A stretch of DNA of 64,000 nt from Octopus sinensis. Taxonomy: Eukaryota. The translations under genes and the position numbers were made by a program. The notes beneath the pieces were generated by a model that had not been told where the DNA came from, searched no databases, and saw nothing but the letters and a program-made list of their open reading frames with translations. This document shows, in pieces, positions 35,720-63,709 of the stretch; the stretch's first letter is position 1; the number at the start of each line of letters is the position of its first letter. Where the stretch lies: positions 40,176,001-40,240,000 of the forward strand of contig NC_043007.1 in NCBI RefSeq assembly GCF_006345805.1. Reading direction: 5' to 3'.

Positions 35720-35820
35720 GACCAAAAACCTACTGTTTCTCCAGTCCCTGAGACCAAAAACCTCCTGTTTCTCCATTCCCTGAGACCAAAAAAACCTACT
35801 GTTTCTCTATTCCCTGAGAC
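35720..35820. repeat. 32-34-bp tandem repeat, 3 copies
   Basis: GACCAAAAACCT(A/C)CTGTTTCTC(C/T)A(G/T)TCCCTGA x3. Confidence 0.85.
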
Positions 35821-39225: not shown

Positions 39226-39275
<50 letters not shown>

Positions 39276-39279
39276 TATG

Positions 39280-39323
<44 letters not shown>

Positions 39324-39336
39324 TATGATGATGATG

Positions 39337-39380
<44 letters not shown>

Positions 39381-41565: not shown

Positions 41566-43182
41566 TTCTAGAAGAACCATGTCCCAGAGAAATCCAAAAG
41601 ATTGTGCTGACAAGTACTGCTCACATACTTAGAAAAGCTCTATCAATTTAAATGTCTGTGTTGTATTACATGAAGATATTTTGCTACTACCCCTAGTTCA
41701 CTGGGTGTGTCTCGGCAAGTGATTGAAACAAACATACAGATTAAAGGTTAATAATAATAATTAGTTGGATCTGTGAAAAATTCACGGAAAAAATAAAAAA
41801 TGTAAGCAACTGTAAACATAATATAATAATAATAATAATAATTCTGAAGCAGAATCTGCATGACACAGTATGACAAAACTGGGCCTTTGAATGAGAAACA
41901 CAAACAATCAATCCATATGATAAGCTTCAGTACAGTTTCCATCAAACCAGTTTTACACTAAAGGCTCAGGTGAACCCAAGATTATAGCAAAAGACAGTTG
42001 CCCCAAATGCTATACAGCAGGATTGAACACGGACCTTGTAATAGTGAAGCATGCTTCTTAAACATTTGGCCAAGCTGCATCTAAACATACTACTGAATAT
42101 ATGCATGAATATGTGCATACAAATGTATAATTTAAAGTGAAACGTAGGCTGTAGCTTTTAATAATGTGATGCTATTTTAGCTCCCAGTGAAATGTAAACC
42201 ATGTTTCTTTTTCCTTTTATGTGGGCAGAAAAACTGACTAATTAATGTTTGCATGCATGTATGTATATTCATGTGTGTAAATATCAGTGTAAATATAGCT
42301 GTGTGTGTGTGTGTGTGTATTTGTGGGCATATATATGTTTATTTATTAAGTCATTAATTTTCAGGTTCATAAATCTGGTTCAATCATTTTGATCTTGTCT
42401 GTAAGTGGGTTTAAAAAGAAAAAAAAAACAAAAAAAAACAGTTTAATAATGAAAGAAGGAAGAAAATGAGCCGGGGACAATGTGGGGGCGTAAGATTAAC
42501 AAGATCACAGGAGCAGTGCTAAACTTAGCTGCAGGAGAGTGACTTAATTTAAAATTGACTTGGAAGCAAACTATAGAAATAAAAATATCACACAAAAAAA
42601 GAAAAATAATAAATAAAAGAAAAATGAATAAATAAATAAATAAATAAAGAATTTGAAAATTTGAACAGAATACTGTAAAATGATCAAAGAAGCAAAATGT
42701 AATCTAAAATCTATTAAAGACTGAAGAGAAAAAAATTAGCAGTTAGGGACTTATATAGTAAGTGTGAGAATTATATTAAAACAAAGAAGTTATTTTTAAA
42801 TTCCTGTTTGAGTCGAGAGAGGAACTATGAAGATTTCGTGTTTCAAGGTAAGAAGAGAAAAAAAGCATTAAATAAGAGACAAGAAACAAAATAATTATCT
42901 GAAGAACCAAGTAAGATAATCTGAGGAGATAATAAGTATCAAATACAGAGAACTTGGGCATAACCTGTACTGGAAGAACTAAGATGTGACTGGCAGAGCT
43001 ATTTTGGCAGCACTGATTTGATGCTGACTTATTTGACAGTTAATTCAATGTTTCACTCACTCACTCATACACACACATGCACGTATACACTCTCCCCCTA
43101 TTCTTCTCTCTTTCTGTATGAGAGCATATTTTTTTTCATGTGTATGAGGAGATGGAAAGTGTTTATGTCAAGCATGTTTACA

Positions 43183-43573
43183 CTTTTACTCTTTTACTTG
43201 TTTCAGTCATTTGACTGCGGCCATGCTGGAGCACCGCCTTTAGTCGAGCAAATCGACCCCGGGACTTATTCTTTGTAAGCCCAGTACTTATTCTATCGGT
43301 CTCTTTTGCCGAACCGCTATGTGACGGGGATGTAAACACACCAGCATCGGTTGTCAAGCAATGCTAGGGGGACAAACACACACACACAAACACACATACA
43401 TATATATGTATACATATGTACAACAGGCTTCTTTTAGTTTCTGTCTACCAAATCCACTCACAAGGCTTTGGTCGGCCCGGGGCTATAGCAGAAGACACTT
43501 GCCCAAGATGCCACGCAGTGGGACTGTACCCGGAACCATGTGGTTGGTTAGCAAGCTACTTACCACACAGCCA
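43183..43573 (-). mobile_element. SINE family A copy
   Basis: Reverse-complement match. Confidence 0.85.
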
Positions 43574-44099
43574 CACCGATGAATAATTTTTAGTGTCGCT
43601 CTCTCTCTTTCACACTCTCTGTATGAGTTAGTGTGTGCGCTTGCCTCCAGTGCTAAGAAATACTGATACCAAAACAGGTGTGATATCCAGTGAGCTATGC
43701 CAAACAGCTGTGCCCAATTGTCACATTTCACAGGAAGCATAGATGATGTTGTGAAGGGAGATAAATCACAACAGACTTCCGAAACAAAAATATTTAAGTG
43801 AAAGACATTAATGTAAGGGATCCATACATAAAAACAAGACTAAGCAGCTCTATATATATCAAAGCAAGTTAAGATATATCGACATGCAGATCTGAGCAGA
43901 TCTATCTATCTATAGAAGCAGGAAGATAAGCAAAGAAATCAAAGCAGGCAAACTTAAGCAAGTAAATGCATACAAATATATGCTAGCAAAGCAAATCCAA
44001 AAATATACACACACATATATGCATAACCAATACAGCTCTGGTAATACAAACAGTGTAAATAGAACTCAAGAAACAAGTATATATATTTTTTTCATTTTT

Positions 44100-44186
44100 A
44101 ATTGGCAGAAATTACAAAGTGACACAAAGGCTGAGTTTTGAGCACAAAACTCTCAGACCTGAAGTCATTTTGTAACTTTGCTGATT
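44100..44186 (-). ncRNA. unassigned miRNA-like hairpin (candidate)
   Basis: Stem of about 35 bp with small bulges (TTACAAAATGAC/GTCACTTTGTAA, AGG-CTGAG/CTCAG-CCT, TTTTG/CAAAA) and an apical TGTG. No family recognised. Confidence 0.45.
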
Positions 44187-44189
44187 AAA

Positions 44190-44190
44190 T

Positions 44191-44228
<38 letters not shown>

Positions 44229-44573
44229 GTATACACCCACACCCACACACACACACACATATATATATATACATAATATATATGTGTGTACATGTATGTG
44301 TGTATATGTGTGTGTGTGTACATGTATGTATATATATACATATATATATATACATATATGCATATATATACATATATATATGTATATATACATATATATA
44401 TACATATATGCATATATATACATATATATATATGCATATATACATATATATATACATATACATATATGCATATACATACATATATATATATACATATATA
44501 TATGCATATATACATATATATATGCATATATACATATATATATATATACATATACAAATATGCATATATATAC

Positions 44574-44626
<53 letters not shown>

Positions 44627-44680
44627 TATATATAAATGCATATATATATATATATATATATAATGCATATATATATATGA
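44190..44680. repeat. about 490-bp compound (TA)/(TACA)/(TGCA) microsatellite
   Basis: Direct reading. Confidence 0.95.
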
Positions 44681-47017
44681 TGTCAGCTAACAAATACTTC
44701 CCCTAAGTTTGGTTAGCAATTGCAACTGCGTTGCATGACTATCCTGTCAAAGAGACATCGAGGCAACCTCATATTTGTTTATTAGACAACTGCTTAAGAC
44801 TCTGAAATTTTTGACCAATGCCAGTATAATAGTATAATACAGAATGCTGTATGTGACTTTTACCTGAGAATGTACCTTAAGAATATAAAAATATAAAACA
44901 AAGCTATGTAGGCCTATAGGCCAACTCACAACCAATCAGTCAGAACCAATTGTAGTCATAAGTTGACAAAGACCAGTATATACGTATATAGGCATTATAT
45001 ATGAAGGTCTACATAGACTCACTTTCAAATGAACAGGTGTTTACTATAAGCCCATTATTATTACACACAAGCACATAGATACACAGTTAGACACTTTGCT
45101 TCCAGGTCAACCTTAGACTATATGTCTTTGTAGAAACATCATTCAGTATAGTCGTGGTGGAAAGCTGGCATCAACAACATTGCCAGGAGTTCACAATCCT
45201 CTATCACTGGATGATGAAGTACAGAAGAACAAGACCTCAGGATACTGAGCCTTTTAGGTGAGATGACAAAGGACCAAGATACCTGGTGCCTAGATGTACT
45301 CAAGAAGACCCGCACCCTGCAGCAGAAGAGTTAAGGCTGATCCTTCTGAAGGTGTAATACATTCATGGTGATGCCATTTAAAAGTGCACATGTAGTGCCG
45401 CATAAAAGTGCCCATGCAGAAACACATAAAAGCACTTGTGCTGAATCACATAAAAGCATCTGTGTGGGGCCATGTAAAAGCACCCATACCACATGAAAGT
45501 ACTCGTGTAGTACCATGTAAAAGTGCTCATATGGTGCCACGTAAAAGCACCCAGAACACCCTGTAAAGTGGTTGGCATTAGAAAGGGTATCCAGCTGTAG
45601 AAACCATGCTAAATCAAACTGGAGTGTGGTGCAGCTCCCCTAGCATGCCAGCTCTGGTTACTCCATCCAAGGAAAACCTTCAGAAATTTCTGGCTCAGTA
45701 GTGCTATCAGAGAAGGAAGAAGAGAACTCATTGCTGGTTTGTGATAAGTTTTATGCACACAGCAGTGCTAATAGCCAAGTGTCTACAATATCACACAGAG
45801 CAACGAAACCATTCTTGATGTGCTCACACTGAGCATTGCTGACTTGTAAAGTTAGAGCAACGTCAAATGGCTGCTGTCACATGTAGTATGCTAACAAATA
45901 TATGCTGAATTTATTGTCAGGATAGCTCCACTGCCTTTGTTTGGTGAAGGGCCAGTAGTTCTGTGTCATCTTGTGGCCACAATAAAAGAGATTGTATGGT
46001 GAGCAATATTAAAAGGACTGAAAATAAACACTTTTCTGTTAGGTCAAGGGCTTCATCCACATTTTCAAATTTCACTCAGAAAGGAGTGCAAGGGTAAAAA
46101 GGGAGGCGTTACTCTCCAGTAAATTTCCTAGGAAGTGTCCAACCCATGCCAACATGGAACATAGATGATAATGACGATGATGATGATGATGATGATGAGA
46201 TGATGCTGATGATGTTGATGATGATGTAAGGGAGAATGGCAAAAATAGACTGTGTGAAAGGGCCAACTCTCAGCAATCAATTGAAGGCCAGAGAATACAG
46301 CTGGCTGCAGCTACCCTTCTTTCTGGGCTTTCTATCATACAGTGAATATCATCACTTCTCTTTCTTTATCCACTCAGTATCTGTGTACCTCTGCTCAACT
46401 TTTTATAATCTGTCAATGTAACTGCCCTCATCCCATCACCCTTTTGGGCAGTAAAAAAAATAATAATTATCCTCATCATTCATAATAAATTTCTTCTTTC
46501 ATTTTGTTTACTTCTTCTTTCTTTGATGTGAAATATGTTAGTCACATTGTCAGAACTAAGGAATACCAAGTCACAAAAACCATTTGATAGGGCAGTGTAA
46601 CAGTGATGTGATGTCACCACAAAGCCACAGTTAGGTCATAAACAGACCAAAAGCAGGTGTGTGTTGTTTGGGTCTAAGCAGGCCCTGATTTACAACGGGT
46701 TGATAATGACATGGCAAATCAAGAAAAAAACCCTGCTTACTGACACTGCCATAAAACTTCATTAAAAAATCAGGTGGAAGGAGAAAGGGGCAAAGCCCTC
46801 TCTTTTCTGTTTTGCTTTTTTAGAGGGTCTGCTTGAAAGAAAGAAAGAAAGAAGGAAGGAAGGAAGGAAAGAAAGAATGAAAGAGAGATAAAGGGTTATG
46901 AATGTGAGTGCAATTTCCTTTTAAACATTTATATTTTTTGGTAGAGGGATGATCACGGTACTTTCCAAAACTGTTACCAATACTTCTAATGTTGCAGTCT
47001 GATATGCCGATACACAC

Positions 47018-47076
47018 TGCAAGCATTACAAAATGTACTAAACCAACAAAAGAATCAGTACCTGATGTAATACTCA
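47018..47076 (-). ncRNA. mir-12: pre-miR-12; mature 5p TGAGTATTACATCAGGTACTGA at 47055-47076
   Basis: The 22-mer matches protostome miR-12 as recalled. It pairs with the 3p arm TAGTACATTTTGTAATGCTTGCA across a 14-nt loop, and the basal helix TGCCGAT/ATCGGCA is present. Confidence 0.93.
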
Positions 47077-48128
47077 GAGCTTGTAGATCGGCAAAAAAAA
47101 ATATCAACGTCAAACCAAGTTGGAGTGGTCAGGGTGGGTGGGTCAGTGGGACCGAGGGAAGAGGAGGAAGAACGGGCAGAGCAAATCATATCAAACATTG
47201 AAATATCTTCCACAGGTGTTCTTGTTCTTTTGGTGGTGCTTGTTGTAATCATCATATTGTTGTTTAGCATCAGTTCAACCTTCATCAAAGATATTTTGGC
47301 CATGACCATCCCATCTTTCGAAATAGCTTACTTCTAAATTAATCTAATGTCCCTCTTCTTTTCTTTTTATCATTTTTAATTATCACAAAGAGTCTGGTAC
47401 ACAAACCTTTTGATTCCAACCCACCCACTCTAAAACATTCAAATTTCTATTAAAATCTCCAGTTTTAATCTCAAAATCCAAACATTGGCTTAATAGAAAA
47501 TTTAATTATTTTACTAAATTCCTCCAAATTCTTAGATTATTTTCAAAAATAGCAGAAACATATAAGCTTTATGTTTCTTAAAAAATATGCCAACCACAAT
47601 TTGGCTGCTATTTCTAACAAATTGAGTGACCATGTAGAAGTAGCCTCATTATCTCATTATGTCACTCATTACCTTATTATGGCACACTTCTCTGTAGGAT
47701 GGTTTAGAGGTTAAAGTTGTTACACAATTAGTCTTTTTTTAATTAATTATGTCTCTCCATTCAAATTAACAAATTAAATAGAATAAGAAACGAATATGAT
47801 CTTGTACCTTGTCAAAAAGTATAAATATATATAAAATAAAATCAGTTTAAAAAATGCCTGGAACAAAATTGGTAGAAAACAGTACAAAAATTATCCTTAG
47901 ACTAATTTACATCCACTTAAATGTTCTGAGTTCAAATCCTATTGATGTTGACACTGTCTTTCATCAACCCAGGGGCAGTGATGAAATAAGAACTGGTGAT
48001 ACATACACACACATATGTATATATGTATGTATGTGCTAACAATTATTTTTATGTTCAGTTATAATAAATACAATTTTACATTACTTTAAGGGGTTACTCT
48101 ATACTTTTGTAGAGTATACATTATACTC

Positions 48129-48246
48129 AAACAAGAATGTTGTTGATAGTGACTTCGAAGTTTTGGGTAGTTAAGCCATCGTTGGCAGTCTGACAATGGC
48201 TTAATTGGCTGAAAGTTCAAAGTCACTTTCAACAACAGTCTTGTTT
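48129..48246. repeat. 118-bp near-perfect palindrome
   Basis: Arms AACAAGA-TGTTGTTGA-AGTGACTT-GAA...AGTTAAGCCAT mirrored across a short loop. Confidence 0.88.
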
Positions 48247-48247
48247 A

Positions 48248-48279
<32 letters not shown>

Positions 48280-48369
48280 CTGTATGTATATTAACCAAAG
48301 AATACAGTGTTGTATATCTGTTGCAGCCAGTCTTACCAAATCAGTTTCGCATACAAATATTGGAGAACT

Positions 48370-48560
48370 GAAAGGTTATCTAATACCATGTGCTTTTCAG
48401 AGATGGCAGGTATGGAAAAACTATGGCCATATTACCCACCCAGGAAGAGGAGAAAAAATTCCAGTCAAATACCGCATAAATTTTTTCTTAAAAAAACTTG
48501 GCTTGTGAGTGAAGTGTGAGAGAGAAGCTATGAGAAAGCCAACAAAAGGGAACCATCATG
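48370..48560 (+). mobile_element. possible Tc1 transposase remnant
   Basis: WKNYGHITHPGRG resembles the Tc1 WKKYG..NLPGRG motif. Short and degraded. Confidence 0.3.
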
Positions 48561-51500
48561 TTCCTGGGCAGGAGAGTTAATTTGTCACAATGGAGAGGAA
48601 GAAGTTAGGAGGCAGAAAGGAAGAGAGAGAGAGAGAGAGCACATGGGAGGAGGAGGAAAGATGGAGAAAAAGAGAGAAATGAGGCAGTAGAGGGTGGGTG
48701 GGAGATGAGTAAGATAGAGGGAAGAAGGAGGATGAGGATGATGAGGAGAAGAAGAAGAAGAAGAAGAAGAAGAAGAAGAAGAAATAGTAATAGCTACTGT
48801 CACCAGACTAGATAGGGCAGTCAGTGTGCGTGTGGAGAATACAGGCCCAACCAGCCACACTACACCCCATACAACTACCCCTACAATTAGGAATATGACA
48901 TGTGGTTTCCAGGCCCGCAGAATCATAGGTCTATGTGCAGAGTCATAGGTATATGGACTACCCCTAGCCCTTTGACCAACTAACACACCTGACCCGGCAG
49001 GTACACTACAACAAAGACAATAGAAACAATAACCAAGTATCCCACACTCCAACACGCACATACATGCACACACACACTCCACCCAAGAAGCTACTGCTAC
49101 AGCAGATAAATCAAATTAAATCTACCCTGAATCAATGTTTGTCTCACACAATATTTCGAATGTTGTACATTGAGTAGGAGGTGATGGTTATACAAAGACA
49201 TATTCTCATATGTTGTAGAATAGCTATTTCACACCATTGGATTTTGCAGGTACCCTCTGGGAAAAGCATAAACATCACAACCCTTCCATTACCCTATTCT
49301 TCCTTGTTAAGTTGGGTTTTAGGATCAGGGTGTTTGTCACTAGCTCTAAGAACAATCACAATCTGCTCAATTTGCTCATCACCATCATCATCTTATTGTC
49401 CATTTTGCCGTGCTTGCATGTATCAGGTGGAATGCCCTCTCTGTTGCCAACTTTCAGCTGTTTCTGAGCGGGTAACATTTCCCCATGGCTAGACGTCTTT
49501 ACAAAGAAGACTTGAAACAAATGATACTGTTGTATGATGGTGAAGCTTACTTATAACCATCAAATGATGTCAAGACAAGGAGACCCCCCCCACACACAAT
49601 GACAGGCTTCTTTCAGTTTCTATTTATCCAAGTCACTCACAAGGATTTGGATGGCTAGAGGCCATAGTAGAAGATACTTGTCCAAGGTCCACTTAGTGGA
49701 ACTGAACCTGAAAGCATGTGGTTGGGAAGCAATCTATTAACCATACAGCCACACTTTAGACTACTCTATTATTTTACTATTTTGATAATCTAGATCAGAG
49801 ATTTCCAAACTCTGTCGTGTCACTTGAGTCACTTGAGTCTGTCATAGATAATCTTTAGCTGTGTCACTGATAATCTCTAAGTATGTTGCTGATAATCTCA
49901 AGTTGTGTTGTATAATCAAGTCAGACCTAATCAATTTTCAAGAATATTTAACTGTGAGGAGCTGACAACTTTGCATGCAATTAAACATGTGACTGGTGAC
50001 ATCATCATCACTATTTATTGTCTGTTTTCCATGCTGTCATGGGTTGGAAGATTTAAGTTCACAGGAATGTAACCAAACCAACACTGTCATAGATAATCAG
50101 AGTTATAATTTTCTGGCAGAGTCTCATCTCTGAGCGAGATGAGGTCTCCTATCATTTAGGATGAGAGTAACTCCAATTAGGTTTAACTCAAATCCTGCTG
50201 ACCTGTTAAACCTGTGCCAGTATGGGAAATGAATTTACAGTGATGCTCTAAATCCCAAGCACACCCTCACCAGTTACCCATCTTCTCTTCTTGTCAAAAG
50301 CATTAACTTCAGTAAAGGATGACAAAACATGTTCAGATAAATTCTCATGCAAAACAAACTTCATGCAGAAATAAATACATATACATGCAATGCAATGCAA
50401 TGGTGTCTGTCTACAAAATGTTATGTTCGTGTTACTGTGAAGGTGTATGGCTCAGTGGTTAGAGCATCGAGTTTATGATTGGGAGGTTATGAGATCCAAT
50501 CCGGGACCGGGGCGGCATATTGTGTTCTTGAGCAAGACACTTTATTTCACGTTGATCCAGTTCACTCAGCTGTAGAAATGAGTTGCAACATCACAGGTGC
50601 CAAGCTGTATCGGCCTTTGCCTTTCCCTTGGATAACACTGGTGGTGTGGAGAGGGGAGGCCGGTATGCATGGGCGACTGCTGGTCTTCCATAAACAACCT
50701 TGCCTGGACTTGTGCCTGCGAGGGTAACTTTCTCGGTGCAATCCCATAGTCAGTCACGACCGAAGGGGGTCTCAACTGGTGAAGAATTATTCAAAACAAT
50801 GGGCTAAAGAAAATAACCATCCCATCAGAACACAAGCGAGTCAAATTTCTTATACATTCTAAATCTATTTGTATATGCTACTCCACTGGTTACTATGGAG
50901 AATATGAATACATTCCTGCTACATGAGGGTCTATATCTCTAAAAATAGCCCCCGACTCTCCTTGAGATCACAACTTGCAATCTTAAAAAAAAGAAAAGAG
51001 AAAGAAAAATAGAAAAAAGATGTGATGGGTACAGATGTAACAGTTTTGATCTAAGGCTACATTACTGTTATTTTGTTCTTTATAAGATGAATAAGACTCT
51101 ACATCCAATAAACCATGAAGACAACCCTGTGCTTATGTAGTGCAACTCAACACTGGCTTCTTTGGGCTTGCGGCAATCACAATACCAGTGAGGAAGAGGT
51201 AGTATGGTTAATAAATTTATTAATATCTTGGAACATAGTAATAATTTACTGTTGTTTATTTAACTGACCCCAGAGAAGATAAAAAAAAAAATAAATGTCA
51301 ACACCAGTGGTAATTGAACTCAGAATATAGGAAGGAGAAATGAAATGCTAGGAGGTGTAAAAATTAAAATTCTTACACTGAAACCCTTTCATTTCTGCCA
51401 ACTGCTTATCTTGGCTATACACACACACATACATTTTATACATACATAAAAATAGTTTGGCCACAATACTCATTGTTTTATATAATGTTTTATATTATAT

Positions 51501-54320
51501 TATAAAACATTAGTGAACATGTTTGTCTTTGTGGATGAAACAAAAAACAAAAGTAACAAGAAAAACCAAAACAAAATTAATTAATAAATAAAAGGAAATA
51601 ACATAACATAAACAAATTCAATTCAAAAGCAAACAAAAGAAAAATAAACAAATCAAACAATGTTTAAAGTTGAAAACAAAAAATAACCACTGTAATACAT
51701 CATGCATTGGATCATATAATGCTGTGCATAAAAATGAAGCTGCTACTGTAGACACTGAGGGACCAGGGGAGAAAAGAAACGGGTGCCCCACTCTGCAAAA
51801 GGGGCTAAGCCCTGATAGGTAAGGCAAATTGAATGAAGGGATGAAGAGATAATGTTTCATCTGGTATAGACTGCTTGTTACCTTCAGATGACATTCTCAG
51901 ATGTTTAGGTGTAGGTTACCCTCTTGTATTACTTGTAAAAGCAAAGCGAATCGAGGGACATGTAAAAATTATGTGTACTGCTCCACAACTGAATTTGAAC
52001 CAGGTGTCTCTCAGCTGGTATCAGTCTTGTACTCTGTTTGTTTCTCTGTTTTTTTTTTTGCCTCCAGTTTTGAGTGATCAGACAAATAAGTAAACTGAGG
52101 ATATGCAAGTACAAAGGATCGTTATCATCGTCACCATCGTCAAAAAGGTTTTATCATTTCTATTGCTCTTCCTGTTTAACCTCAAGCCAGCTCTGATCAA
52201 GCAAACACATGATCAATGGCATTCTTAACCATGACCAGCCCATCTTTTGTTTAGGGTGGTGGTGGTGCCACGTTGACAGCAGTGGTGGTGAAGGTATAAG
52301 CTGTTAGCTAAGACATTAATGTGAAGGAAATTTGACAGGGAGATTTTCAATCATTATTTCCAGCAGGTCAAGCACTGACTTAGAGCTTTGTATGCCAGTT
52401 GTCTTATACTACCATGTAGCTATGGGTTGGGTAGGATTACCAAACTGCAGACAGACTCTTCCCAGCCTTTCATTACATGCCATTGTCCTGAGACCAGGAC
52501 TCACCACCTTTCCATATCCATCTCAATGCAATAATTATTTTCAATGGTCTTATCTATATGTTATAGCATATGTTGTTGATGATGATGATGTTTAGCCCCA
52601 GGTCAACCCTAATCAAGTTGATGTACATTCAAATATAGTCCAACCATAACCGTCTCACCTCTTTTTCCCAGATGCAATGTATCTGTCTTAGTCACTATTG
52701 ATGTTCTTGTTTAGCCTCCAAGATCAATCAATATAGAAGTGTGAGCATGCAGGAAACGAGGGTCGTACAGAATTACACAGTGAACAATTTGGTGATTGGA
52801 TGAGGCAAAAATATGGTGAAGATACATTATATTTAATCCTTTGGCATTTCAACTAGTTATATCCAGCTCAGATATTTTATTTGTTTTGCTTTTAAATTGG
52901 CCAGATTCAACCTCTCACAGCTACCCTACAATGTCATTCTAAAAATAACCAATCACATCATCAAGAGCTCAGAGCTATGAGATAACAAATGGTTAATTCA
53001 AAACAACATGAGTAAATAAGCATTACATATGACAGAATGATTTGAATGCTAAATGGTTAGGGAAAGAGACAGCCAATTTGACTATGGAACAGGCTAGCCA
53101 AAACCCATGCAGTGCTCTAAACAAGCAAACCTAAGGAGAATGGCATTCCAACCATGACCATCCCAACTTTTCAGATGCAATACGCCTAGCAGTTCATTAT
53201 CCATTATGAAGGATGTAATTTGTCTGTTTACTAAAGTAAGTTAACTAATCACACAAGAAAATTGGCGTTAAATTCTGACCAAGTAGACTAATGATCAAAA
53301 GTAAAAGACCATCACCTGACCTTTTATTCTGGCATGGTGTAGCTTGAACTACACTATCCAGTGTATCCCTCCATTTGAAAGAAGAGTGTGATTTGAGGAA
53401 GATTTAACCACTATTTCTGCTGATCAAGCTGTCCTTACCCCTTATTGGCAAAGTTACCCTGACATTAGGGTAGTAAAGTTGGGTATCGAAACTGACCATT
53501 GCAACAAACAAAATGGTAACACAAGTGTTGGTGGTGATGGTTACTCCCATGTCAGCTCCTGAGAAGAACTTCAATAGAATGCATTCCATATGTGACCATC
53601 CAGTCTCTTTTTGTACATCTAAGATTACACTATCCAGGGTATCCTATCCTTTGCTAAGACAGCAGTGTACTAGTGCAGGGAATTTGGTTGCTGTTTCTAG
53701 CAGCTCAAGCGACTACATAAAATTTCTCTTATCAGCTCAAGAGGTGATGGAGGAGGTTATGAATGGAGAAGATCACAGAGATTTGAAACTAAGCTAAGTA
53801 TGATGGTTGTAATAATGGTGTCTAGTAGTAGTAGTGATAGTGCTGGCAGTAGTTGTGGTGGTGAGGGTGGTGCTGAAGTTGGTGAACTCATGTAGTGTGG
53901 TGTGTTTCATGTCTTTTAGTGAAGCATTCTTGTCATCTTGGTTAATATCTTGTAGTAGTAGTAGTAACAGTGGTGGTAGTAGTAGTAGCAGCAGCAGTAT
54001 AGGTCCATATTATTTATTGAGGCATTCATGAAACCTGGTCTAACATCTTTGGGCAGTAGTAGTAATAGTAGTAGTAGTAGTAATCAAGATGGTGGGGAAG
54101 CAGTTACAGGTTCTCACCAATTATTTTTAGGGGGTGGAGCAAAGCATTTACGTAATTACAAAAGTAGTAGTAGTGGTGGTAGTGTCAGCAGTAGCAGCAG
54201 CAGTAGCAAATATTGTGGTGGTAGTGGTGGTGGTGTGGTGGTGGTAGTGGTGGTGGTGGTGGTGGTGGTGGTGGTGGTGGTAGTGGTGGTGTGGATTCAT
54301 GCTGTTAGCTGAGACATTCA

Positions 54321-54380
54321 TGTAATCTCGGCTAGTAACTTGAGGCTATCTTATCCACTCGGAATTACTAACTGAGATTA
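54321..54380 (-). ncRNA. mir-216: second pre-miR-216 family hairpin; 5p TAATCTCAGTTAGTAATTCCGA at 54359-54380
   Basis: Same seed AATCTCA. Near-perfect pairing with 3p TCAAGTTACTAGCCGAGATTACA, GTG at the start of the loop and CNNC (CAGC) about 17 nt downstream. Confidence 0.85.
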
Positions 54381-56073
54381 CACAAAGATCAAAAAAAGGA
54401 TTATAAACACACACACGCACATTAAAAAAAAAAAAAAGACCAATACATAAACATACATGTTATTATTTACATTATATATAGACATAAATATATATGCACA
54501 CACAAGCTCGGATTAACCAATAAGTAAAATAAGCACATGCTTTATGCAACAACGGGAGGGAGCACCACAGAAGTTTTTCCAGTGCCGGGCGTACCATAGT
54601 GAAAAATGAGATGGCTGAAATGGGGTCTTGTGGAATGTGTTGAAAAATTTGCATTTTTTTTTTTGTTTTTTTTTTAACTGTAGCCATAGCTACAAAGTAA
54701 AATAATTAACTTATGATGATTGTTGATGATTTTGGTGAAATGAGCAAAACTGAAAAAAAAAAAAAACAGTGAGTGTGTGTGTGTGTACGGGGGTGATGTG
54801 AGATGATGAATTGGAGGAATGGGTGGAGACAAAACTGAAATTTTGATATCTATTATTTTACATAGAATAATTAATGTATGTTAATTACCAGCCAATTAGA
54901 CAATGGAAGTGTTCAAGAGAAGTAATTGTGCTATGATTAGAACAAAAGACAGCTTTAATCTGGCCAACCTCCTGCACCCCTCCATGTATGTGTGTGTGAG
55001 TGTATATATATATGTATATATATACATACATATATATGTGCATACATATATATATACACACACACACACACATACATCGTCATCATCATCGTCATGAATT
55101 AATGTTCACTTTTCCATGCCAACATGAATGAGACAGAATTTGTTAAGGCAGATTATTTTCTACAGCTGGATGCCCTTCTTGTCACCAACCTTCATTAGAT
55201 TTCTCCATGACAAGACAATTTTCATAGAAGATTGGAAATAAACACCCCTTGTATGATGGTGATGCTTATTTACAACTATCACATAATGTCAAGGGTATAT
55301 ATACACACACACACACACGGTGGGATTCTTTCAATTTCCATTTACAAATCCACTGAAAATGGCTTTGGTGAGCCTATGGTTAAAGCAAAGGCACTTGTGT
55401 AAGGTGGTGTGGAATGGAACCATATGGGCAGGGAAGCAAGCTTTTTAACCACATAGCCATATATAATCATCATCATCATCATCATCATCATTTAATGTCC
55501 ACCTTCCATGCTGGCATGTATACACACACACATATACATACAGGTAAACACACACATATATATATATATATATATACATACATACATACACATACACACA
55601 AACATATAGTGTGTGCACAGGTACAAGCAGTTAGAGAAAAGGTAGCCATAGTGAATGTTGTCAGTTAACTGTTTCTACAGTGATATCAGCAACAACAACA
55701 TCAGCAGCAGATGGCAACTGTAATGTGCAGTATAATGCAGAACGACACACGTTTGGTATTTTGGGTTGCATTGCTAAGAAACAGTCACTGCTGACTGTTC
55801 TGAGTTGGTGCAGTAACAGTGCATGTTGCTGAAGCATTTTGGGTGCCAGCGATATCTGAGGTGAACAAAACTTGTAAATGTTTTGTTTGTACGCAAATGA
55901 TTGTTAATGTTGCGAAAGACTGCAAGAGGTGAAGACTTTGATCAATGCTTATCCTTCGTTACAGTTAGCAATGACAGTAAAACCGTAAAGTAATCAGTAT
56001 TAAAGAGGAATGCCATTGGAATGTGAGTGCCATTCAAGACAAGAAATGAATGATTGTGGCTAAAAGTCAATAA

Positions 56074-56465
56074 TCTCTCTCTATATAAAGCTGAAGTTGT
56101 CTGTGTGTGGTAGGTTTGGTAGCTTTCAACTAACACTACCTCCTCCGAGACCCTGCGGCGCAAGTTGACCAGAATTGAGAGTATGATAGAAGAAGGCTTG
56201 GTCTTCCTTCCGTAGAAGAAAAAATTCAAATCGGACCATGTTAACACCAAAAATTATTTACATCAAAAAGGTGCTTTTTTTCTATGAAAATCCCTATTTT
56301 TTACGATATTTTGACTGCTGTGTCGCCATTTTTCGGTGTATTTCAACCAGAAAAATGTTCACTTAAAGAGAATAACAAGCTACATAATGCAAAATTTTTA
56401 CTTTTCAAAAATTCCAATTCTAAAGGGTTGAAACAAACCCGAGCAACGCCGGGTGAAACTGCTAA
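56074..56465 (+). mobile_element. non-autonomous Helitron, family 2
   Basis: TC start, CCCGAGCAACGCCGGG hairpin, CTAA end. Closely similar to 61832-62223. Confidence 0.78.
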
Positions 56466-56782
56466 TAAACAATAAATTTAAAAAGAAAAAAGAAAAACAC
56501 AAGAAATGACTACGATGAACATGACATAATCCATTGTGGGATACCCTTAACATAAATAGTGAAACTTTTTTTTTGGTGGAAGGGTGGAAGTTAAATCAAA
56601 CCAGGTAAATAATATTAGGATATTAGGAATTATATGCACTGCTTTGAGCCAGTGAAGAACAGCAGTGCTTCTATATGAGGTGCAAACTGTAATTATTGTT
56701 TACCAGGTAAGATTTCATATGTATATCATTCTACTTAAGTACCTAGTTGTTAAGTGCCTTCTTTTGTGGCGCTCCCTTCATT

Positions 56783-56995
56783 ACTCTTTACTCTTTTTAC
56801 TCTTTTATTTGTTTCAGTCATTTGACTGTGGCCATGCTGGAGCACCGCCTTTAGTCGAGCAACTCGACCCCGGGACTTATTCTTTGTAAGCCTAGTACTT
56901 ATTCTATTGGTCTCTTTTGCCGAACCGCTAAGTGGTGGGGACATAAACACACCAGCATCGGTTGTCAAGCAATGCTAGGGGGTCAAACACACACG

Positions 56996-57047
<52 letters not shown>

Positions 57048-57220
57048 CCTATATACGACAGGTTTCTTTCAATTTACGTCTACCAAATCCACTCACAAGG
57101 CTTTGGTCGGCCTGAGGCTATAGTAGAAGACACTTGCCCAAGGTGCCACGCAGTGGGACTGAACCCGGAACCATGTGGTTGGTTAGCAAGCTACTTACCA
57201 CACAGCCACTCCTGCGCCTA
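56783..57220 (-). mobile_element. SINE family A copy
   Basis: Full reverse-complement match. Confidence 0.88.
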
Positions 57221-58802
57221 TATTGCAAGCATTTAGACTGTATCTCTGGTTCCCCTTTCATCCAAAATCATCCAACAGATCTGACAAGCTTAGGACACTA
57301 CTCGAGGTCATTAACCCTGTTCTTTCTCCATTGACTGATATTCATAAAATCTTACCCAAGCACACTGTTCCACATCATTCAGGATGGGTATCAATTACAT
57401 TCAACCTCATCAAGATCAACTTTGTCTTTCTCTTTTCCACTGGTCACACCATTTACCACATTTCTCCTCAATACACAATTGAACCAATTCTACCCAATAG
57501 CTCTGTCCATCCCTCACTCTCCAACCATATGCATCTTTAAACCACCCTTTCTCTAATTCTAGTTTCCACATTCTCTTCAATTCATCTTCTTGGACAAGTT
57601 CTCCTTCAGAGTACATTCCAGCACTTTGTCACCACTATATTAACCTTTCTTTCAGGCACAACTCCAACCATATAAAATCTAAGGTAGCCATGACTATCAC
57701 CCACAAAAATAAACCAGTTCTTCCTCCTCCCATCATACTCCAGCTTCTTAATACCTTGATTAAATCAAGCACTCTGTTTCCCATACAACCCTACAGTCTT
57801 CGGGGTTCTTTGACTTGCAGATTACAAAGCAACCTTACTAGGGGTTGTGCCATGTGAAAAAAACAAAAACAAAGAAAAACACACTCGGTACACTATGTAA
57901 AGTAGTTAGCATCAGGAAGGGCGTTTAGATATAGAAATCATGCCAAAACTGAAACAGTGGAGCAGAACGTGGTCATCTGACCTGGTGGATCCTGTCAAAA
58001 TGTTCATCCCATACCTGCCTGAGCTGGTACCACGTGAAAAGCACTCAGTTCATTCTGCTGGGTGGTTGGTGTAAGGAACGGCATCCAGCTATAAAAAACC
58101 GTGCCAAAACAGAAACAGAAATCTGGTGCAGTCTTCTGCTTGGCCAGCTCTTGTCAAACAGTCTAAACCATGCCAGCACAGAAGGTCGACATTAAACAAT
58201 GATGATGATGATGCCCACACGGAAAAAAAAGATGGACTTTAAAATGATGATGATGATGAAGATGCTGTGTTTATATACATACATACATATATATGTATGT
58301 ATATATTTATGGTAGGATATCTGTCATGTTTATGGATGTGGGTTTACAGATGTGTCCCATAAGCAGCCATTTACATTTCCCATCCAATATATTAAATGCT
58401 ATTATTTATAGTTTTATCTGTTTTGAGTTTCACTATTCCAAAAACCAATTTTTGTTTCCCATTCTCTGAAAATTTCTAAATTCTCTACATATCAACGATA
58501 CACACACACACACACATACACACACATGCATATGTGAGCATATGCATATGTATGAATGTGTGGCTCACTTATGTAAACACCCAGAAACTGAACACAAAAG
58601 TAAAAAAAAAATTATAAAAAAAAAACAAAAATGCAAACATAAATGAAAATAACCAAGTAAAAGAACAAAATAAAAATTAAGACAATGAAAAAAAAAACAA
58701 TGTAATAAAAGAACATGCAACAAAGAAAACTGAAAAAAAAACAAACAAAATCTGTGATTTGAGGATATTGATGAGCGTTGAGATGTTTTGGCAAGGTGAT
58801 AG

Positions 58803-58862
58803 TTCAACCACAGCAAGTAACGGTGAGAGATTGAACCACTCATATATTACCAGCTGAGATTA
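58803..58862 (-). ncRNA. mir-216: pre-miR-216 family (216a/miR-304-type seed); 5p TAATCTCAGCTGGTAATATATG at 58841-58862
   Basis: The first 17 nt match the miR-216a consensus TAATCTCAGCTGGTAAT. It pairs with 3p TCACCGTTACTTGCTGTGGTTGA, has a basal AGGTG/CACCT helix and a CNNC motif (CATC) about 18 nt downstream. Confidence 0.88.
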
Positions 58863-59002
58863 CACAAGCACCTGTCAATCAAAGAGTGGTTTGGTCACCA
58901 CATCTAGTTATTAAATCAGGTAAATACCAATGTACACACACAACCATGTATAAGTATAAAGTATATATAATAATTATGTGTGTGTATGTAAGAATGTATA
59001 TA

Positions 59003-59056
<54 letters not shown>

Positions 59057-59273
59057 TATGTAAAAATAGATACAGTGGGAGATAAGTAGTCAGATATGAA
59101 TAGATAGGTGAACTGAAAGAGAGAGAGAGACAGACAGACATTGATAGAGTGATAGATAGATTAGATAAACAAATAGACAGACAGACAGCTACTAAGATAC
59201 AAAGACAGAAAGACAAATAGTCAGACAGACGAACACCCAACTTTTCACCGCATGTATTGATATGAAGTTTTAA

Positions 59274-59720
59274 CCCTTTAGCATGTCAAATGTAGTGCTT
59301 ATTTATTCATGTTATTTGGAATTAATTATGCGTTATCTCATACCTTTGAGATTCCAGTGATATGGTAGTTCAATTTTAGAATGACATTGTAGGGAAGGTG
59401 TGAGAGGCCAAATATGGCTGTTTGAATATAAAACAGGCACAATGTTTGGGCTGGATATGACTGCTTTAAATGCCAAAGAGTTAAGAGATACTGTTAACCC
59501 TCTAGCATTCAGATGACACTGTCAAATGTAATGCTTGTTTAATCACATTCTTTTGAATTAATCACGCATTATCTTGTGGCATCGAGATTTCAATGATATG
59601 TGATCATTTTAAATTTTAGAATGACATTGTAGGGTAGGTGTAAGATGCTGGATCTGGCCTCTTTGAACATAAAACAGGTAGAATGTTTGGGTCTGATATG
59701 ACCAGTGTAAGTGTAAAAGG
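59274..59720. mobile_element. two adjacent piggyBac-type MITE copies (about 59274-59480 and 59498-59720)
   Basis: Each starts TTAA|CCCT(T/C)TAGCAT and shares the body TGTCAAATGTA(G/A)TGCTT...TTTTAGAATGACATTGTAGGG. The first ends GCCAAAGAG|TTAA. Confidence 0.7.
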
Positions 59721-60611
59721 TTTAGAGGGAGTGCGTGTGTATATACACACATAAAAAACACACACACAAACACACACATGCAGGCACAAAATATGCATAC
59801 TAATTATGATAATTAGAATGTGTCTAAAAATGCACACACATAGACAATATACCACGATCTAGAGCCTTTTTATACAAAGTGGTGGTAGGGTGTATATATG
59901 CGTATGTAACACTGAATAAATTTATGTATATGCATGCAAGTTATATAATATTAATGGGATTTTCTTTGATAATTTTCTTGGTGTCCATGCCAATTCTATG
60001 CATACATCTAGAACAATCTGAATTTAGCTCCAGTAGAGATAGTGATGAAACTAGAGGTGACTGAGAGGCTGCTGTTGTATTCCCACCTCCCAAAATAAAG
60101 AACACACACACACACACATATCCATATATCCCCATCCTGACTACATTTCAATGGCAAGACACAAGTAAATATACATGTCTGTATATATATGTATATGTAT
60201 GTATGCATGTGAATGAATACACACACTTATATGTATATATTCACACATCTGAAAACAAATATTAGGAAGTGCTTTGGTGGTCCCCATGCCTAAGCCATCA
60301 TACACACAGTTTGCCTCCACAAAAAAATAAATACATAGAATATTAATTTAGCTGATAAAAATGGATAGAAATGATGATGATGAGGTTGGTGATAGTAACG
60401 ATAATGAAAATCATCATTGTCATCAACATGACGATGATGATGATGATGATGACGATTGGTGATAATGATGACGTTGATGTATATTTTTTGCGAAAGATTT
60501 GCTTTTTCTTCCTTTAAAACGATCTGAAATGAAGATAATCAATATCAATTATGATTTAGAAATAGCTGATAATTAACGTGTGTGCATGTGTGTGTATGGT
60601 TTATATATATA

Positions 60612-60656
<45 letters not shown>

Positions 60657-60819
60657 AGACACACACACACATTAATTGTTTGTGTGTATACATATAGCAG
60701 TATATATAGATGCGTGTATGCACTCATGCATAATGCATAAATGCACATGCACACAAACAGATATACACATTCTCAAATAATAAACTTACGCATGCAATAT
60801 GTGCATGTAAATTCATTAT

Positions 60820-60875
60820 ACATGTGTACACACACATATACACACACAGACATATATATATATATACACATATAT

Positions 60876-60910
<35 letters not shown>

Positions 60911-60959
60911 GCTTTATATATATATATATACATCTATATATACATATATATATATATAT

Positions 60960-61008
<49 letters not shown>

Positions 61009-61320
61009 CATCTATATATACATATATATATATTATACATACATATATAAATACATATATATAAATAGATATATATATATTTATATATACATACATATAT
61101 ATATATATAGATATATATATATTTATATATACATACATATATACATATACATATATATTATACATACATATATATATACATACATATATACATATACATA
61201 TATATATTATATACATACATACATACATATATGTACATAAATATATATATACATACACACAAATATACATATATATATATATAACAAAAAATATATATAT
61301 ATCTATATATATAATGATAT
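60820..61320. repeat. about 500-bp compound (TA)n/(TACA)n microsatellite
   Basis: Direct reading. Confidence 0.95.
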
Positions 61321-61831
61321 GGAAAAAAACAATGCTCCCATCGTTCTATTTCTAATTAGCAACCAATATTAATTGGTGCCATGTAATCAACTCACATTGT
61401 ATTCAGAATAACTCATTACTACTATCAGTGAAACTGTTAGTGTGACGTACATGCTGTAACCAAGTAAAACCTCATCAATAAGAAGTAAATGGGTAAATAG
61501 ATAAATAAACATAACGAACGCAAGTTGGACGCAAATTAATGTTAGCTATTAGGCAAGACCGAGCCACTTTAAGACACTGAAGCATTCAGCAAGTAGTTTA
61601 AACCATGCGCATGATGCATTCTAAAGTATTCTGGTAAAGTGTTGAAAATTAATTTAAATAGAAAACTATAATGAAGGAATAAATTGGCAGATAGACAAAT
61701 AATTTAATATATTGTAAGAAGAAAAACAGTGTAAATTGATTTTTTAAAAATTATAATTGCTTTTGTCTTTGTGCATATATATATATGAATGTGTGTGTGT
61801 ATGCATGCATACATAAATATATGCATATAAA

Positions 61832-62223
61832 TCTTTATATATATAAAGCTGAAGTTGTCTGTGTATGGCAGGTTTGGTAGCCTTCAACTAACACTATCTC
61901 CTCCGAGACCCTGCGGCGCAAGTAAACCAAAATTGAGAGTATGATAGACGAAAGCTTGCTCTTCCTTCCGTAGAAGAAAAAATTCAAATTGGACCATGTT
62001 AACACCAAAAATTATTTACATCAAAAAGGTGCTTTTTTGCTATGAAAATCCCTATTTTTTATGATTTTTTTACTGCTGTGTCGCCATTTTTCGATGTATT
62101 TCAACCAGAAAAATGTTCACTTAAAGAGAATAACAAGCTACATAATGCAAAATTTTTACTTTTCAAAAATTCCAATTCTAAAGGGTCAAAACAAACCTGA
62201 GCAATACCGGGCGATACTGCTAG
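61832..62223 (+). mobile_element. non-autonomous Helitron, family 2
   Basis: A|TC start, subterminal hairpin, CTAG|T end. Confidence 0.8.
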
Positions 62224-63709
62224 TACATTATAGAGCTGCTTCAATTGTTTAACCTGAATTTATTCTAGTTAAGCAGCACCATAGCAAATAATATATGCAC
62301 TATTTCTATATACTTAAGACTAGAGACTTTGATTTCGTTTTGGAAGCGAGTTGAGGGCATGGTTTTGATAAGTTGCAAGTACAGGGATATACAGCATCTG
62401 AAACTTTCAATCACCCTCAATTTGATTTTGTTCTACCCAACTCAGAAGCACATTGTGTTTTTTTTAACACGTCTTTAAAGGGATATTTCCCAGACGAAAA
62501 ACACTGTAACTTCTGGTGTCATGTTAAGTATGTGGTATTGGTTATGTTTACACTATAGAGCTGCTACAATTCCATAATCTAAAGATATATATTCTTTTAC
62601 TCTTTTACTTGTTTCAGACATTTGACTGTGGTCATGCTGGAGCACTGCCTTGAGCTGAAGCACACACACACACAATATCAATATATGTGTGTGTGTGTGG
62701 ATATATAATTACCATAACTAGTTATATATGGATATTAATATTGTATGGTATATTTGAAATTGCTCAATTCCTCTTCCACTTTTCACTTAGACATTGCTGT
62801 AACTCAGAGAATATTAACAATACAAAGGTGAGGACATTGGGGATAGCTACTGAAACATTGAGAATGTCCAGTAAAATAGGGCATAGCTGCAAAATCAATA
62901 ATCATGCAGTTAAGGAAGGGGTCATCCCTAAGAACTAGCACAGCAGTACCATCATTACCTGCAACAAGGGTAAAAGAGATGTGCTAGAGAGAGAGAGAGA
63001 GAGAGAGAGAGACAAAGAGGCAACTACAAAAGCATCAAATTGACGGACCAAGTTATAGTAGGGACAAAGAGAGATAAAACAGAGCTAATTAGGAAAAGAA
63101 TTAGCTTAGATGAGATGCATTTCAGGTTGGTACAACTACAGAAGGTGGAGGCGTGCGTCTTAGTGGTTAGGGTATTGAACTCATGATCATAAGGTTGTGG
63201 TTTCGATTCCTGGACCGGGCGATGCGCTGTGTTCTTGAGCAAAACACTACATTTCACGCTGCTCCAGTCCACTCAGCTGATGAAAATGAGTAATCCTGCG
63301 ACGGACCGGCGTCCCGTCCAGGTGGGGAATTTCTATGCCACTGAAACCTGGAAACCGGCCCTTATGAGTCTGGCATGGCTCGAGAAGGAACATTTGTGGA
63401 GGTGCAATGGCCCAGTGGTTAGGGCAGCGGACTCGTGGTTGGAGGATAGCGGTTTCGATTCCGAGACCGGGCATTGTGTGTGTTTATTGAGCGAAAACAC
63501 CTAAAAGCTCCACAAGGCTCCAGCAGGGGGTGGTGGCAACCCCTGTTGTACTCTTTCACCACAACTTTCTCTAACTCTCTCTTCCTATTTCTTGAGTAAC
63601 GTTGCAATGGACTGGCGTCCCGTCCAGCTGGGGGAATACATACACCACAGAAACTGGGAAACCAGGCCCATGAGTCTGGATAGGCTTGAAAAGGACTACA
63701 AAGAAACAA

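What the first reader, a model, noticed from the sequence alone, without database searches (positions are those of the whole stretch)
47018..58862. miR-216/miR-216/miR-12 cluster on the TRIP11 (GMAP-210) strand, apparently inside a giant intron
Seen: three family-assignable pre-miRNA hairpins, all on the minus strand, in 5'->3' order miR-216 (58.8 kb), miR-216 (54.3 kb), miR-12 (47.0 kb), upstream of the TRIP11 exon at 29589-29670 and spread over about 12 kb. Known: the Drosophila miR-283/miR-304/miR-12 cluster (283 and 304 are miR-216 family) lies in an intron of Gmap, the TRIP11 ortholog. Inference: the host gene-cluster linkage predates the ecdysozoan/lophotrochozoan split and here has been stretched by repeats.
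Basis: partly seen in the sequence, partly recalled or inferred. Interest (0 to 1): 0.75.

Follow-up and report, generated by a model that had tools for sequence, protein, structure and literature searches.

The report
Conserved miR-216/miR-12 cluster in TRIP11 intron
Three real, deeply conserved microRNA hairpins (two miR-216, one miR-12) sit on the coding strand of the Golgi gene TRIP11/GMAP-210, upstream of its last exons, but this ancient microRNA-in-host-gene arrangement was already published in 2025, so this is an ordinary, unusually stretched copy.

Summary
Observation confirmed. Three canonical pre-miRNA hairpins lie on the minus strand: mir-216 at 58790-58872, mir-216 at 54308-54390 and mir-12 at 47007-47088. 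All miss Rfam's gathering scores. Covariance models I built only from unrelated metagenome hairpins score them at 46.7-58.9 bits (E about 1e-9 to 1e-12), far better than on the plus strand. No third mir-216 copy is in the window.

The minus-strand exons at 29589-29670, 28055-28169 (GRAB domain) and 16583-16933 are the C-terminal exons of a GMAP-210/TRIP11-type gene. Exon A is internal: it has an acceptor site, starts in phase 1 and has no ATG. The conserved exon expected upstream of it is not in the window. The hosting intron is therefore longer than 34 kb, and its 5' end is unseen.

In 50 comparison contigs from other animals, the order is always coiled-coil exon, mir-216 copies, mir-12, then GRAB exon, on one strand and usually within 1-5 kb. 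The cluster therefore occupies the same intron across protostomes.

Liu et al. 2025 (PMC11848845, Table 2) list 216~trip11 at Bilateria and 12~trip11 at Protostomia. Low interest.

The parts
58790..58872 (-). pre-mir-216 copy 1 (5'-most). Predicted 5p UAAUCUCAGCUGGUAAUAUAUG at 58862->58841. Predicted 3p ACCGUUACUUGCUGUGGUUGAA at 58824->58803.
   Evidence: Rfam mir-216 35.9 bits. Own model R1 46.7 bits, E about 3e-9, against 24.5 bits on the plus strand. Fold z = -2.94. Duplex geometry.
54308..54390 (-). pre-mir-216 copy 2. Predicted 5p UAAUCUCAGUUAGUAAUUCCGA at 54380->54359. Predicted 3p CAAGUUACUAGCCGAGAUUACA at 54342->54321. The seed AAUCUCA is intact on the minus strand only.
   Evidence: Rfam mir-216 31.2 bits and mir-304 26.6 bits. 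R1 58.9 bits, E about 2e-12, against 32.9 bits on the plus strand. Fold z = -4.72. Geometry.
47007..47088 (-). pre-mir-12. Predicted 5p UGAGUAUUACAUCAGGUACUGA at 47076->47055. Predicted 3p AGUACAUUUUGUAAUGCUUGCA at 47039->47018.
   Evidence: Exact 21-mer match. Rfam mir-12 34.3 bits. Own model R2 53.7 bits, E about 9e-12. Fold z = -5.55. A consensus fold of 18 orthologues shows compensatory changes in the basal stem.
29671..64000 (-). Visible part of the TRIP11 intron that holds the cluster. It is longer than 34.3 kb, and its 5' end and upstream exon lie beyond the window.
   Evidence: No match to the conserved upstream exon by tblastn or by an HMM of 8 orthologous exon peptides (best 5.8 bits). 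No other coding gene is evident. Intra-window repeats cover 25%.
29589..29670 (-). TRIP11 exon A, 82 nt, encoding (V)EEKEKLLKEADQEIHRLKFDSEAFVD. The first exon downstream of the cluster. Phase-1 start.
   Evidence: Splice sites read directly. 68% identity to P0001 residues 81-111.
28055..28169 (-). TRIP11 exon B, 115 nt, the GRAB domain: KLVMKNLIINYLSTSQTKKGDVLRLIGGILEFSPEDFSK.
   Evidence: Sequence. Pfam GRAB 24.8 bits, E = 1.9e-5. tblastn to P0001, E = 4e-12.
16583..16933 (-). TRIP11 last coding exon, SFSELFVNFLEKESSPPPP...ILNDVLTQKS, with the stop codon at 16583-16585.
   Evidence: Sequence. Homologues P0001-P0005, best E = 4e-60. tblastn.

Best explanation
This is the orthologue, in a repeat-rich protostome genome, of the ancient sense-intronic MIR-216 / MIR-12 microRNA cluster of TRIP11 (GMAP-210; Gmap in Drosophila).

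The three hairpins lie in the intron that precedes the last coiled-coil exon and the GRAB-domain exon.

The likely mechanism is inferred, not shown:
1. RNA polymerase II transcribes the long TRIP11 pre-mRNA.
2. Microprocessor (Drosha/Pasha) crops the three hairpins from the intron, leaving 2-nt overhangs.
3. Dicer removes the loops.
4. The 5p arms are loaded into Argonaute. Their seeds are AAUCUCA (twice) and GAGUAUU.

Compared with other animals, the only change is scale. Spacings of 0.2-3 kb elsewhere have grown here to 4.4 kb, 7.2 kb and 17.3 kb, through insertion of SINE/LINE-like repeats and microsatellites.
For: Hairpins:
- Families, strand and canonical geometry are established.
- Models trained without the window score them at E about 1e-9 to 1e-12, and only on the minus strand.

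Host exons:
- Exon A, the GRAB exon and the last exon are on the same strand with consistent phases.

Comparative evidence:
- A scan of metagenome contigs with the miR-12 21-mer gave 49 loci with 37 distinct hairpins.
- 17 loci carry mir-216-family hairpins, always upstream of miR-12 and on the same strand.
- 12 loci carry a GRAB exon downstream (L001, among them). 7 carry the conserved coiled-coil exon upstream. 4 carry both: L024, L025, L030 and L049.
- L001, an ENA contig found through the last exon alone, has miR-12 1.9 kb upstream of its exon A homologue.
- Insect-like loci L016 and L014 show a 283-type and a 304-type hairpin, then miR-12, behind the same exon.

Literature:
- PMC11848845 Table 2 lists 216~trip11 (Bilateria), 12~trip11 (Protostomia) and 217~trip11 (Chordata) as sense-intronic origins.
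- PMC12714197 states that Drosophila miR-283 is nested in Gmap.
Against: - The upstream TRIP11 exon is not in the window, so enclosure by the intron rests on homology, not on sight.
- All three hairpins are below Rfam's gathering scores.
- GRAB is 1.2 bits below Pfam's cut-off.
- There are no expression data, so co-transcription with the host, arm choice and cleavage sites are all inferred.
- Copy 1 is the weakest hairpin: z = -2.94, with several G:U pairs and mismatches in the duplex.
- No hairpin with the AAUAUCA seed (283/216b type) is present, although every comparison locus with mir-216 copies has one.
Confidence: 0.85

Rival explanations
1. The cluster lies in the intron but is its own transcription unit, driven by an internal promoter. 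Host and microRNA expression would then be uncoupled.
For: - The intron is longer than 34 kb, and the first hairpin is at least 5 kb from any exon.
- PMC11848845 argues that old intragenic microRNAs tend to gain independence from their hosts.
- PMC12714197 reports that somatic Gmap depletion did not reproduce the effects seen in the miR-283 knockout.
Against: - Same-strand, same-intron placement was retained in every comparison locus that could be judged. This is what dependence on host transcription predicts.
- No promoter evidence can be obtained with these tools.
Confidence: 0.2
2. The cluster is intergenic. TRIP11 would start between 29.7 and 47 kb, or the upstream part of the gene would be missing or rearranged in this genome or assembly.
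For: No TRIP11 exon is detectable anywhere in 29.7-64 kb.
Against: - Exon A has a strong acceptor site, starts in phase 1, has no ATG, and corresponds to a position about 180 codons from the stop.
- In seven other loci, the preceding exon lies upstream of the microRNAs.
Confidence: 0.04
3. One or more hairpins, most plausibly copy 1 at 58.8 kb, is a decaying, no longer processed paralogue.
For: - Copy 1 has the weakest fold: z = -2.94, with 17 of 22 nucleotides paired and several wobble pairs.
- It has the lowest model score, 46.7 bits.
Against: - Its seed and first 16 nt are identical to the family consensus.
- Its strand asymmetry is strong (46.7 against 24.5 bits).
- It has an 11-bp basal stem.
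Confidence: 0.08

Closest known systems
Drosophila melanogaster mir-283 / mir-304 / mir-12 cluster in Gmap
   Same: - Two MIR-216-family hairpins are followed by mir-12, on the sense strand of the GMAP-210 orthologue (PMC12714197 for miR-283 nested in Gmap).
- The first 21 nt of miR-12 appear identical. This is inferred from PMC12553114, which gives the Heliconius sequence as one nucleotide different from the fly's.
- Insect-like contigs L016 and L014 show the same exon, then a 283-type hairpin, a 304-type hairpin and miR-12.
   Different: - Both copies here carry the AAUCUCA seed. No copy has the AAUAUCA seed of miR-283.
- The cluster spans 11.9 kb instead of roughly 1 kb (the fly figure is from memory).
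- The intron here is longer than 34 kb.
MIR-216~trip11 and MIR-12~trip11 sense-intronic linkages of Liu et al. 2025 (Mol Biol Evol, PMC11848845, Table 2). Their 34 species include Crassostrea gigas and Lottia gigantea.
   Same: Same microRNA families, same host gene family, same strand. This is the same system.
   Different: - The paper treats the linkage at gene level.
- The present data add that the intron and its phase are the same across loci: between the ...L(K/R)xE exon and the exon(s) encoding the GRAB domain.
- This copy is greatly expanded.
Vertebrate mir-216a / mir-216b / mir-217 cluster
   Same: MIR-216 paralogues are clustered with a third microRNA downstream. According to PMC11848845, lamprey retains the Mir-216/217 cluster inside trip11.
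   Different: - Jawed vertebrates lost the trip11 host copy (PMC11848845).
- In them the cluster sits in a non-coding host (from memory).
- The third member is MIR-217, not MIR-12.

Membership tests
MIR-12 (Rfam RF00751) | Mature 5p sequence and seed GAGUAUU | tested here: met
   - UGAGUAUUACAUCAGGUACUG matches exactly at 47056-47076(-).
- The same 21-mer occurs in 49 metagenome loci.
- PMC12553114 gives the Heliconius sequence as one nucleotide different from Drosophila miR-12.
MIR-12 (Rfam RF00751) | Rfam gathering score (55 bits) | tested here: not met
   34.3 bits, E = 6e-4 on 15 kb. My recollection is that the Rfam seed is mostly insect sequences. An own model built from 17 diverse hairpins gives 53.7 bits, E about 9e-12.
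MIR-12 (Rfam RF00751) | Canonical hairpin: at least 16 paired nt in the duplex, 2-nt offsets and a basal stem | tested here: met
   - 18 of 22 nt paired, a 12-bp basal stem and a 22-nt 3p arm.
- z = -5.55.
- Compensatory pairs in the alignment.
MIR-216 (Rfam RF00654; includes miR-283 and miR-304) | 5p seed AAUCUCA (or AAUAUCA) followed by GCUGGUAA | tested here: met
   - Copy 1 is UAAUCUCAGCUGGUAAU, identical to the consensus of 20 hairpins.
- Copy 2 is UAAUCUCAGUUAGUAAU, with two transitions after the seed.
MIR-216 (Rfam RF00654; includes miR-283 and miR-304) | Rfam gathering score (53.5 bits) | tested here: not met
   35.9 and 31.2 bits. Own model R1 gives 46.7 and 58.9 bits.
MIR-216 (Rfam RF00654; includes miR-283 and miR-304) | Lies upstream of mir-12 (or mir-217) on the same strand | tested here: met
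   The window order is 216, 216, 12 on the minus strand. The same order holds in 17 of 17 loci that have mir-216 hits.
Any microRNA (MirGeneDB criteria) | Reads from both arms with 2-nt offsets and a homogeneous 5' end | not testable with these tools
   No small-RNA data are available here.
GMAP-210 / TRIP11 / Gmap | C-terminal GRAB (GRIP-related Arf-binding) domain | tested here: inconclusive
   - Window exon B: 24.8 bits, E = 1.9e-5, against a cut-off of 26.
- Orthologous exons downstream of miR-12 in other loci: 8 of 9 hit GRAB, and 4 are above the cut-off, up to 33.4 bits.
GMAP-210 / TRIP11 / Gmap | Long coiled coil and N-terminal ALPS motif | not testable with these tools
   These parts of the gene lie outside the window. 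No full-length relative could be retrieved.
Sense-intronic microRNA cluster of trip11 (PMC11848845) | Hairpins between two coding exons of the host, on its strand | tested here: inconclusive
   - The downstream exons and the strand are shown.
- The upstream exon is not in the window.
- It lies upstream of the microRNAs in 7 comparison loci.
Sense-intronic microRNA cluster of trip11 (PMC11848845) | Co-transcription with the host | not testable with these tools
   No RNA-seq data are available.

The most novel reading that the evidence does not exclude
Two readings remain open.

1. The cluster has stayed in exactly the same phase-1 intron in all comparable protostome loci. That intron lies between the last long coiled-coil exon and the exon(s) encoding the GRAB domain. 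This may reflect a functional coupling between microRNA cropping and production of the TRIP11 3' end or GRAB domain, rather than mere inertia.

2. This lineage may have lost or converted the AAUAUCA-seed paralogue (miR-283 / 216b type), leaving two AAUCUCA copies. That would change the cluster's target range.
Probability: 0.15. Interest if true: 0.4.

Novelty: already known. Interest (0 to 1): 0.2.

Why it matters
The locus is a clean example of a host-gene/microRNA linkage that has lasted since the bilaterian (MIR-216) and protostome (MIR-12) ancestors. It survived here despite a more than ten-fold expansion of the intron.

The principle and this particular linkage are already published (PMC11848845), so the window adds another instance and no new biology.

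Two small increments come from this work:
- The cluster occupies the same intron, with the same phase, in many unrelated animal contigs.
- This genome shows no copy with the 283-type seed within 5 kb upstream of the first hairpin.

Tried and rejected
- **Rfam at gathering thresholds on the whole window:** it found only a U6-like sequence. The microRNA hits appear only in E-value mode, among many microsatellite artefacts such as mir-297 and mir-466, which I discarded.
- **Upstream TRIP11 exon:** I searched by tblastn with P0001 and with an HMM of eight orthologous exon peptides against the six-frame translation. Nothing matched.
- **Extra small exon between the GRAB exon and the last exon:** it is present in P0001, L001 and L002, but tblastn and a motif scan did not find it here.
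- **Third mir-216 copy or an AAUAUCA-seed copy:** none found.
- **Plus-strand reading of the nearly palindromic mir-216 hairpins:** rejected. The seed is broken there (AAUCUCG), the fold is weaker and the model scores are lower.
- **Full-length TRIP11 relative:** the protein search returned only C-terminal fragments without names.
- **Supplementary tables of PMC11848845:** not held.
- **A further literature search for trip11 plus mir-217:** it gave nothing relevant.
- **Source organism:** it could not be identified with these tools. A cephalopod-like mollusc is a guess, based only on the repeat-rich, AT-rich, long-intron architecture.
Full report
**1. The hairpins**

A whole-window Rfam scan at gathering thresholds finds no microRNA, only a U6-like sequence. 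In E-value mode over 45.5-60.5 kb, three relevant minus-strand hits emerge among many microsatellite artefacts:
- mir-216 at 58797-58870, 35.9 bits.
- mir-216 at 54315-54388, 31.2 bits (also mir-304 at 26.6 bits).
- mir-12 at 47014-47082, 34.3 bits.

All three are below the gathering scores of 53.5 and 55 bits.

The 21-mer TGAGTATTACATCAGGTACTG occurs exactly once, at 47056-47076(-). The three regions fold as single hairpins at -34.9, -30.0 and -28.7 kcal/mol, with z-scores of -5.55, -4.72 and -2.94. Each folds better on the minus strand than on the plus strand.

Predicted duplexes are canonical:
- 17-19 of 22 5p nucleotides are paired.
- The 3p arms are 22 nt with 2-nt overhangs.
- The basal stems are 9-12 bp.

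**2. An independent test of family membership**

I scanned public metagenome contigs for the miR-12 21-mer and obtained 49 loci, L006-L054. Together with L001, which was found through the host gene, and the window itself, they give 37 distinct pre-miR-12 sequences. These show the usual microRNA pattern of an invariant 5p arm, a partly conserved 3p arm and free loops. A consensus fold shows compensatory changes in the basal stem.

From these loci I collected 20 distinct mir-216-family hairpins. I then built two covariance models that contain no window sequence, R1 and R2.
- R1 scores the window at 58.9 bits (54308-54390, minus strand, E about 2e-12) and 46.7 bits (58790-58872, minus strand, E about 3e-9).
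- The plus strand of the same sites scores 32.9 and 24.5 bits. Nothing else in the window exceeds 17.6 bits.
- R2 scores 53.7 bits at 47007-47088 on the minus strand (E about 9e-12), against 17.4 on the plus strand.

The window holds exactly two mir-216 copies and one mir-12.

**3. The host gene**

The exon at 29589-29670(-) has a polypyrimidine tract with AG before it and GTAAGT after it. It joins in frame to an exon at 28055-28169 that encodes KLVMKNLIINYLSTSQTKKGDVLRLIGGILEFSPEDFSK. A terminal exon follows at 16583-16933, ending ...ILNDVLTQKS and a stop codon.

The joined peptide finds five unnamed C-terminal fragments in the protein collection. The best is P0001, with E = 4e-60 and 54% identity.

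Pfam gives GRAB at 24.8 bits, E = 1.9e-5, just under the cut-off of 26. GRAB is the Arf-binding domain of GMAP-210 and Rud3.

These are therefore the last exons of a GMAP-210/TRIP11-type gene. Exon A starts in phase 1, has no ATG, and lies about 180 codons from the stop. It cannot be a first exon.

**4. Is the cluster inside an intron?**

The 80 residues of P0001 that precede exon A find nothing in the window. An HMM of eight orthologous exon peptides against the six-frame translation gives a best score of only 5.8 bits. No other convincing coding exon is present between 29.7 and 64 kb on either strand.

The upstream exon therefore lies beyond 64 kb. The intron is longer than 34.3 kb, and the cluster (47.0-58.9 kb) is inside its visible part. 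The enclosure is inferred and was not seen.

**5. Comparative evidence for the inference**

L001 is an ENA contig found only through its TRIP11 last exon. It carries a miR-12 hairpin 1.9 kb upstream of its exon A homologue, on the same strand.

Counts among the comparison loci:
- 17 have mir-216-family hairpins, always upstream of miR-12 and on its strand.
- 12 have a GRAB-type exon downstream, L001 among them. 8 of 9 such exon translations hit Pfam GRAB, and 4 are above the cut-off.
- 7 have, upstream of the microRNAs, a conserved coiled-coil exon ending ...AA.RL.EQLD.K....L(K/R).E followed by one base and GT, so a phase-1 intron.
- 4 loci show both flanks: L024, L025, L030 and L049. In L024 the whole intron is about 1.2 kb.

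Two loci, L016 and L014, have AAAUAUCAGCUGGUAAUUCUGGG and UAAUCUCAUGUGGUAACUGUGAG hairpins. From memory, these match the insect miR-283 and miR-304 types. They lie behind the same exon.

The cluster therefore occupies the same intron across very different protostomes. The window fits that layout, with spacings enlarged to 4.4, 7.2 and 17.3 kb.

**6. Repeats**

Sequences that recur within the window cover 25% of 29671-64000 and 20% of the cluster span. The hairpins and exons are unique. Microsatellites are abundant.

This is a lower bound on repeat content. 'Stretched by repeats' is plausible but only partly shown.

**7. What is already known**

Liu et al. 2025 (Mol Biol Evol, PMC11848845) analysed 34 metazoans, including Drosophila, Crassostrea gigas and Lottia gigantea. 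[quoted passage not shown]
- 216~trip11 at Bilateria.
- 12~trip11 at Protostomia.
- 217~trip11 at Chordata.

They also note that the Mir-216/217 cluster is retained in trip11 in cyclostomes. PMC12714197 states that Drosophila miR-283 is nested in Gmap. PMC12553114 describes mir-12 as broadly conserved across Protostomia, with a typical hairpin in spiralians.

**8. Mechanism**

Shown: three family-assignable hairpins with canonical geometry lie on the host's strand, in the conserved intron position.

Inferred: Microprocessor crops them from the TRIP11 pre-mRNA, Dicer processes them, and the 5p arms are loaded into Argonaute.

An internal promoter cannot be excluded. The two modes are not mutually exclusive.

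**9. Loose ends**

- Neither copy has the AAUAUCA seed that is present in every comparison locus with mir-216 copies. That paralogue may lie further upstream in the intron, or it may have been lost or converted. I could not assign the two copies to paralogue groups with confidence.
- The 3p arm of copy 2 (CUCAAGUUACUAGCCGAGAU) resembles that of the miR-12-proximal AAUCUCA copy of L019 and L033.
- The source organism could not be determined.

**10. Verdict**

The feature is an orthologue of a published system, so it is ordinary apart from its size.

Noticed in passing
window 40057-40162 (-): A U6 snRNA-like sequence (66 bits, above Rfam gathering) lies inside the same intron, on the same strand. 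Its ACAGAGA box reads ACAGGGA. Four bases of the conserved UUAGCAUGG stretch, including the AGC triad, are missing. It is probably a U6 pseudogene or retrocopy.
   Followed up: partly
window ~3300-5300: A tandem duplication of about 1.27 kb. Identical ORF translations appear at 3304-3600 and 4574-4870, and at 3747-4016 and 5017-5286. Intra-window repeat coverage of 4-6 kb is 98%.
   Followed up: no
window, many sites on both strands (e.g. 1342-1680, 2841-3410, 12455-12789, 33290-33559, 43181-43579, 56753-57233): A SINE-like element recurs more than ten times. It is recognisable by the same reading-frame ghosts, such as LKAVLQHGHSQMTETSKR and RSGTEPGTMWLVSKLLTTQP, and is usually next to a (TA/TG)n microsatellite.
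   Followed up: no
window 63505-63999 (+), 29197-29541 (-), 20-274 (-): Open frames that look by eye like transposon remnants: a reverse-transcriptase-like frame at the window end, a LINE-tail-like frame between TRIP11 exons A and B, and a mariner HTH-like frame at the start. They were not checked against Pfam.
   Followed up: no
window 47-64 kb; loci L006-L049: The window has no mir-216 paralogue with the AAUAUCA seed (283/216b type), although all comparison loci with mir-216 copies have one. Some loci (L030, L049) carry three copies, in the order a, b, a2, before miR-12.
   Followed up: partly
L011, L006, L010, L017, L029, L033 and window 54313-54395 (+): mir-216 hairpins are nearly palindromic. 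The antisense strand also scores 30-50 bits with the family model and would present a similar 5p arm. In the window's copy 2 the antisense seed is broken (AAUCUCG).
   Followed up: partly
P0001, L001 7289-7408, L002 7321-7440; window 16.9-28.0 kb: Relatives have a small extra exon (...W..F(F/L)R.G...P.TTP.R) between the GRAB exon and the last exon. It was not found in the window. There the two exons can join directly in frame.
   Followed up: partly
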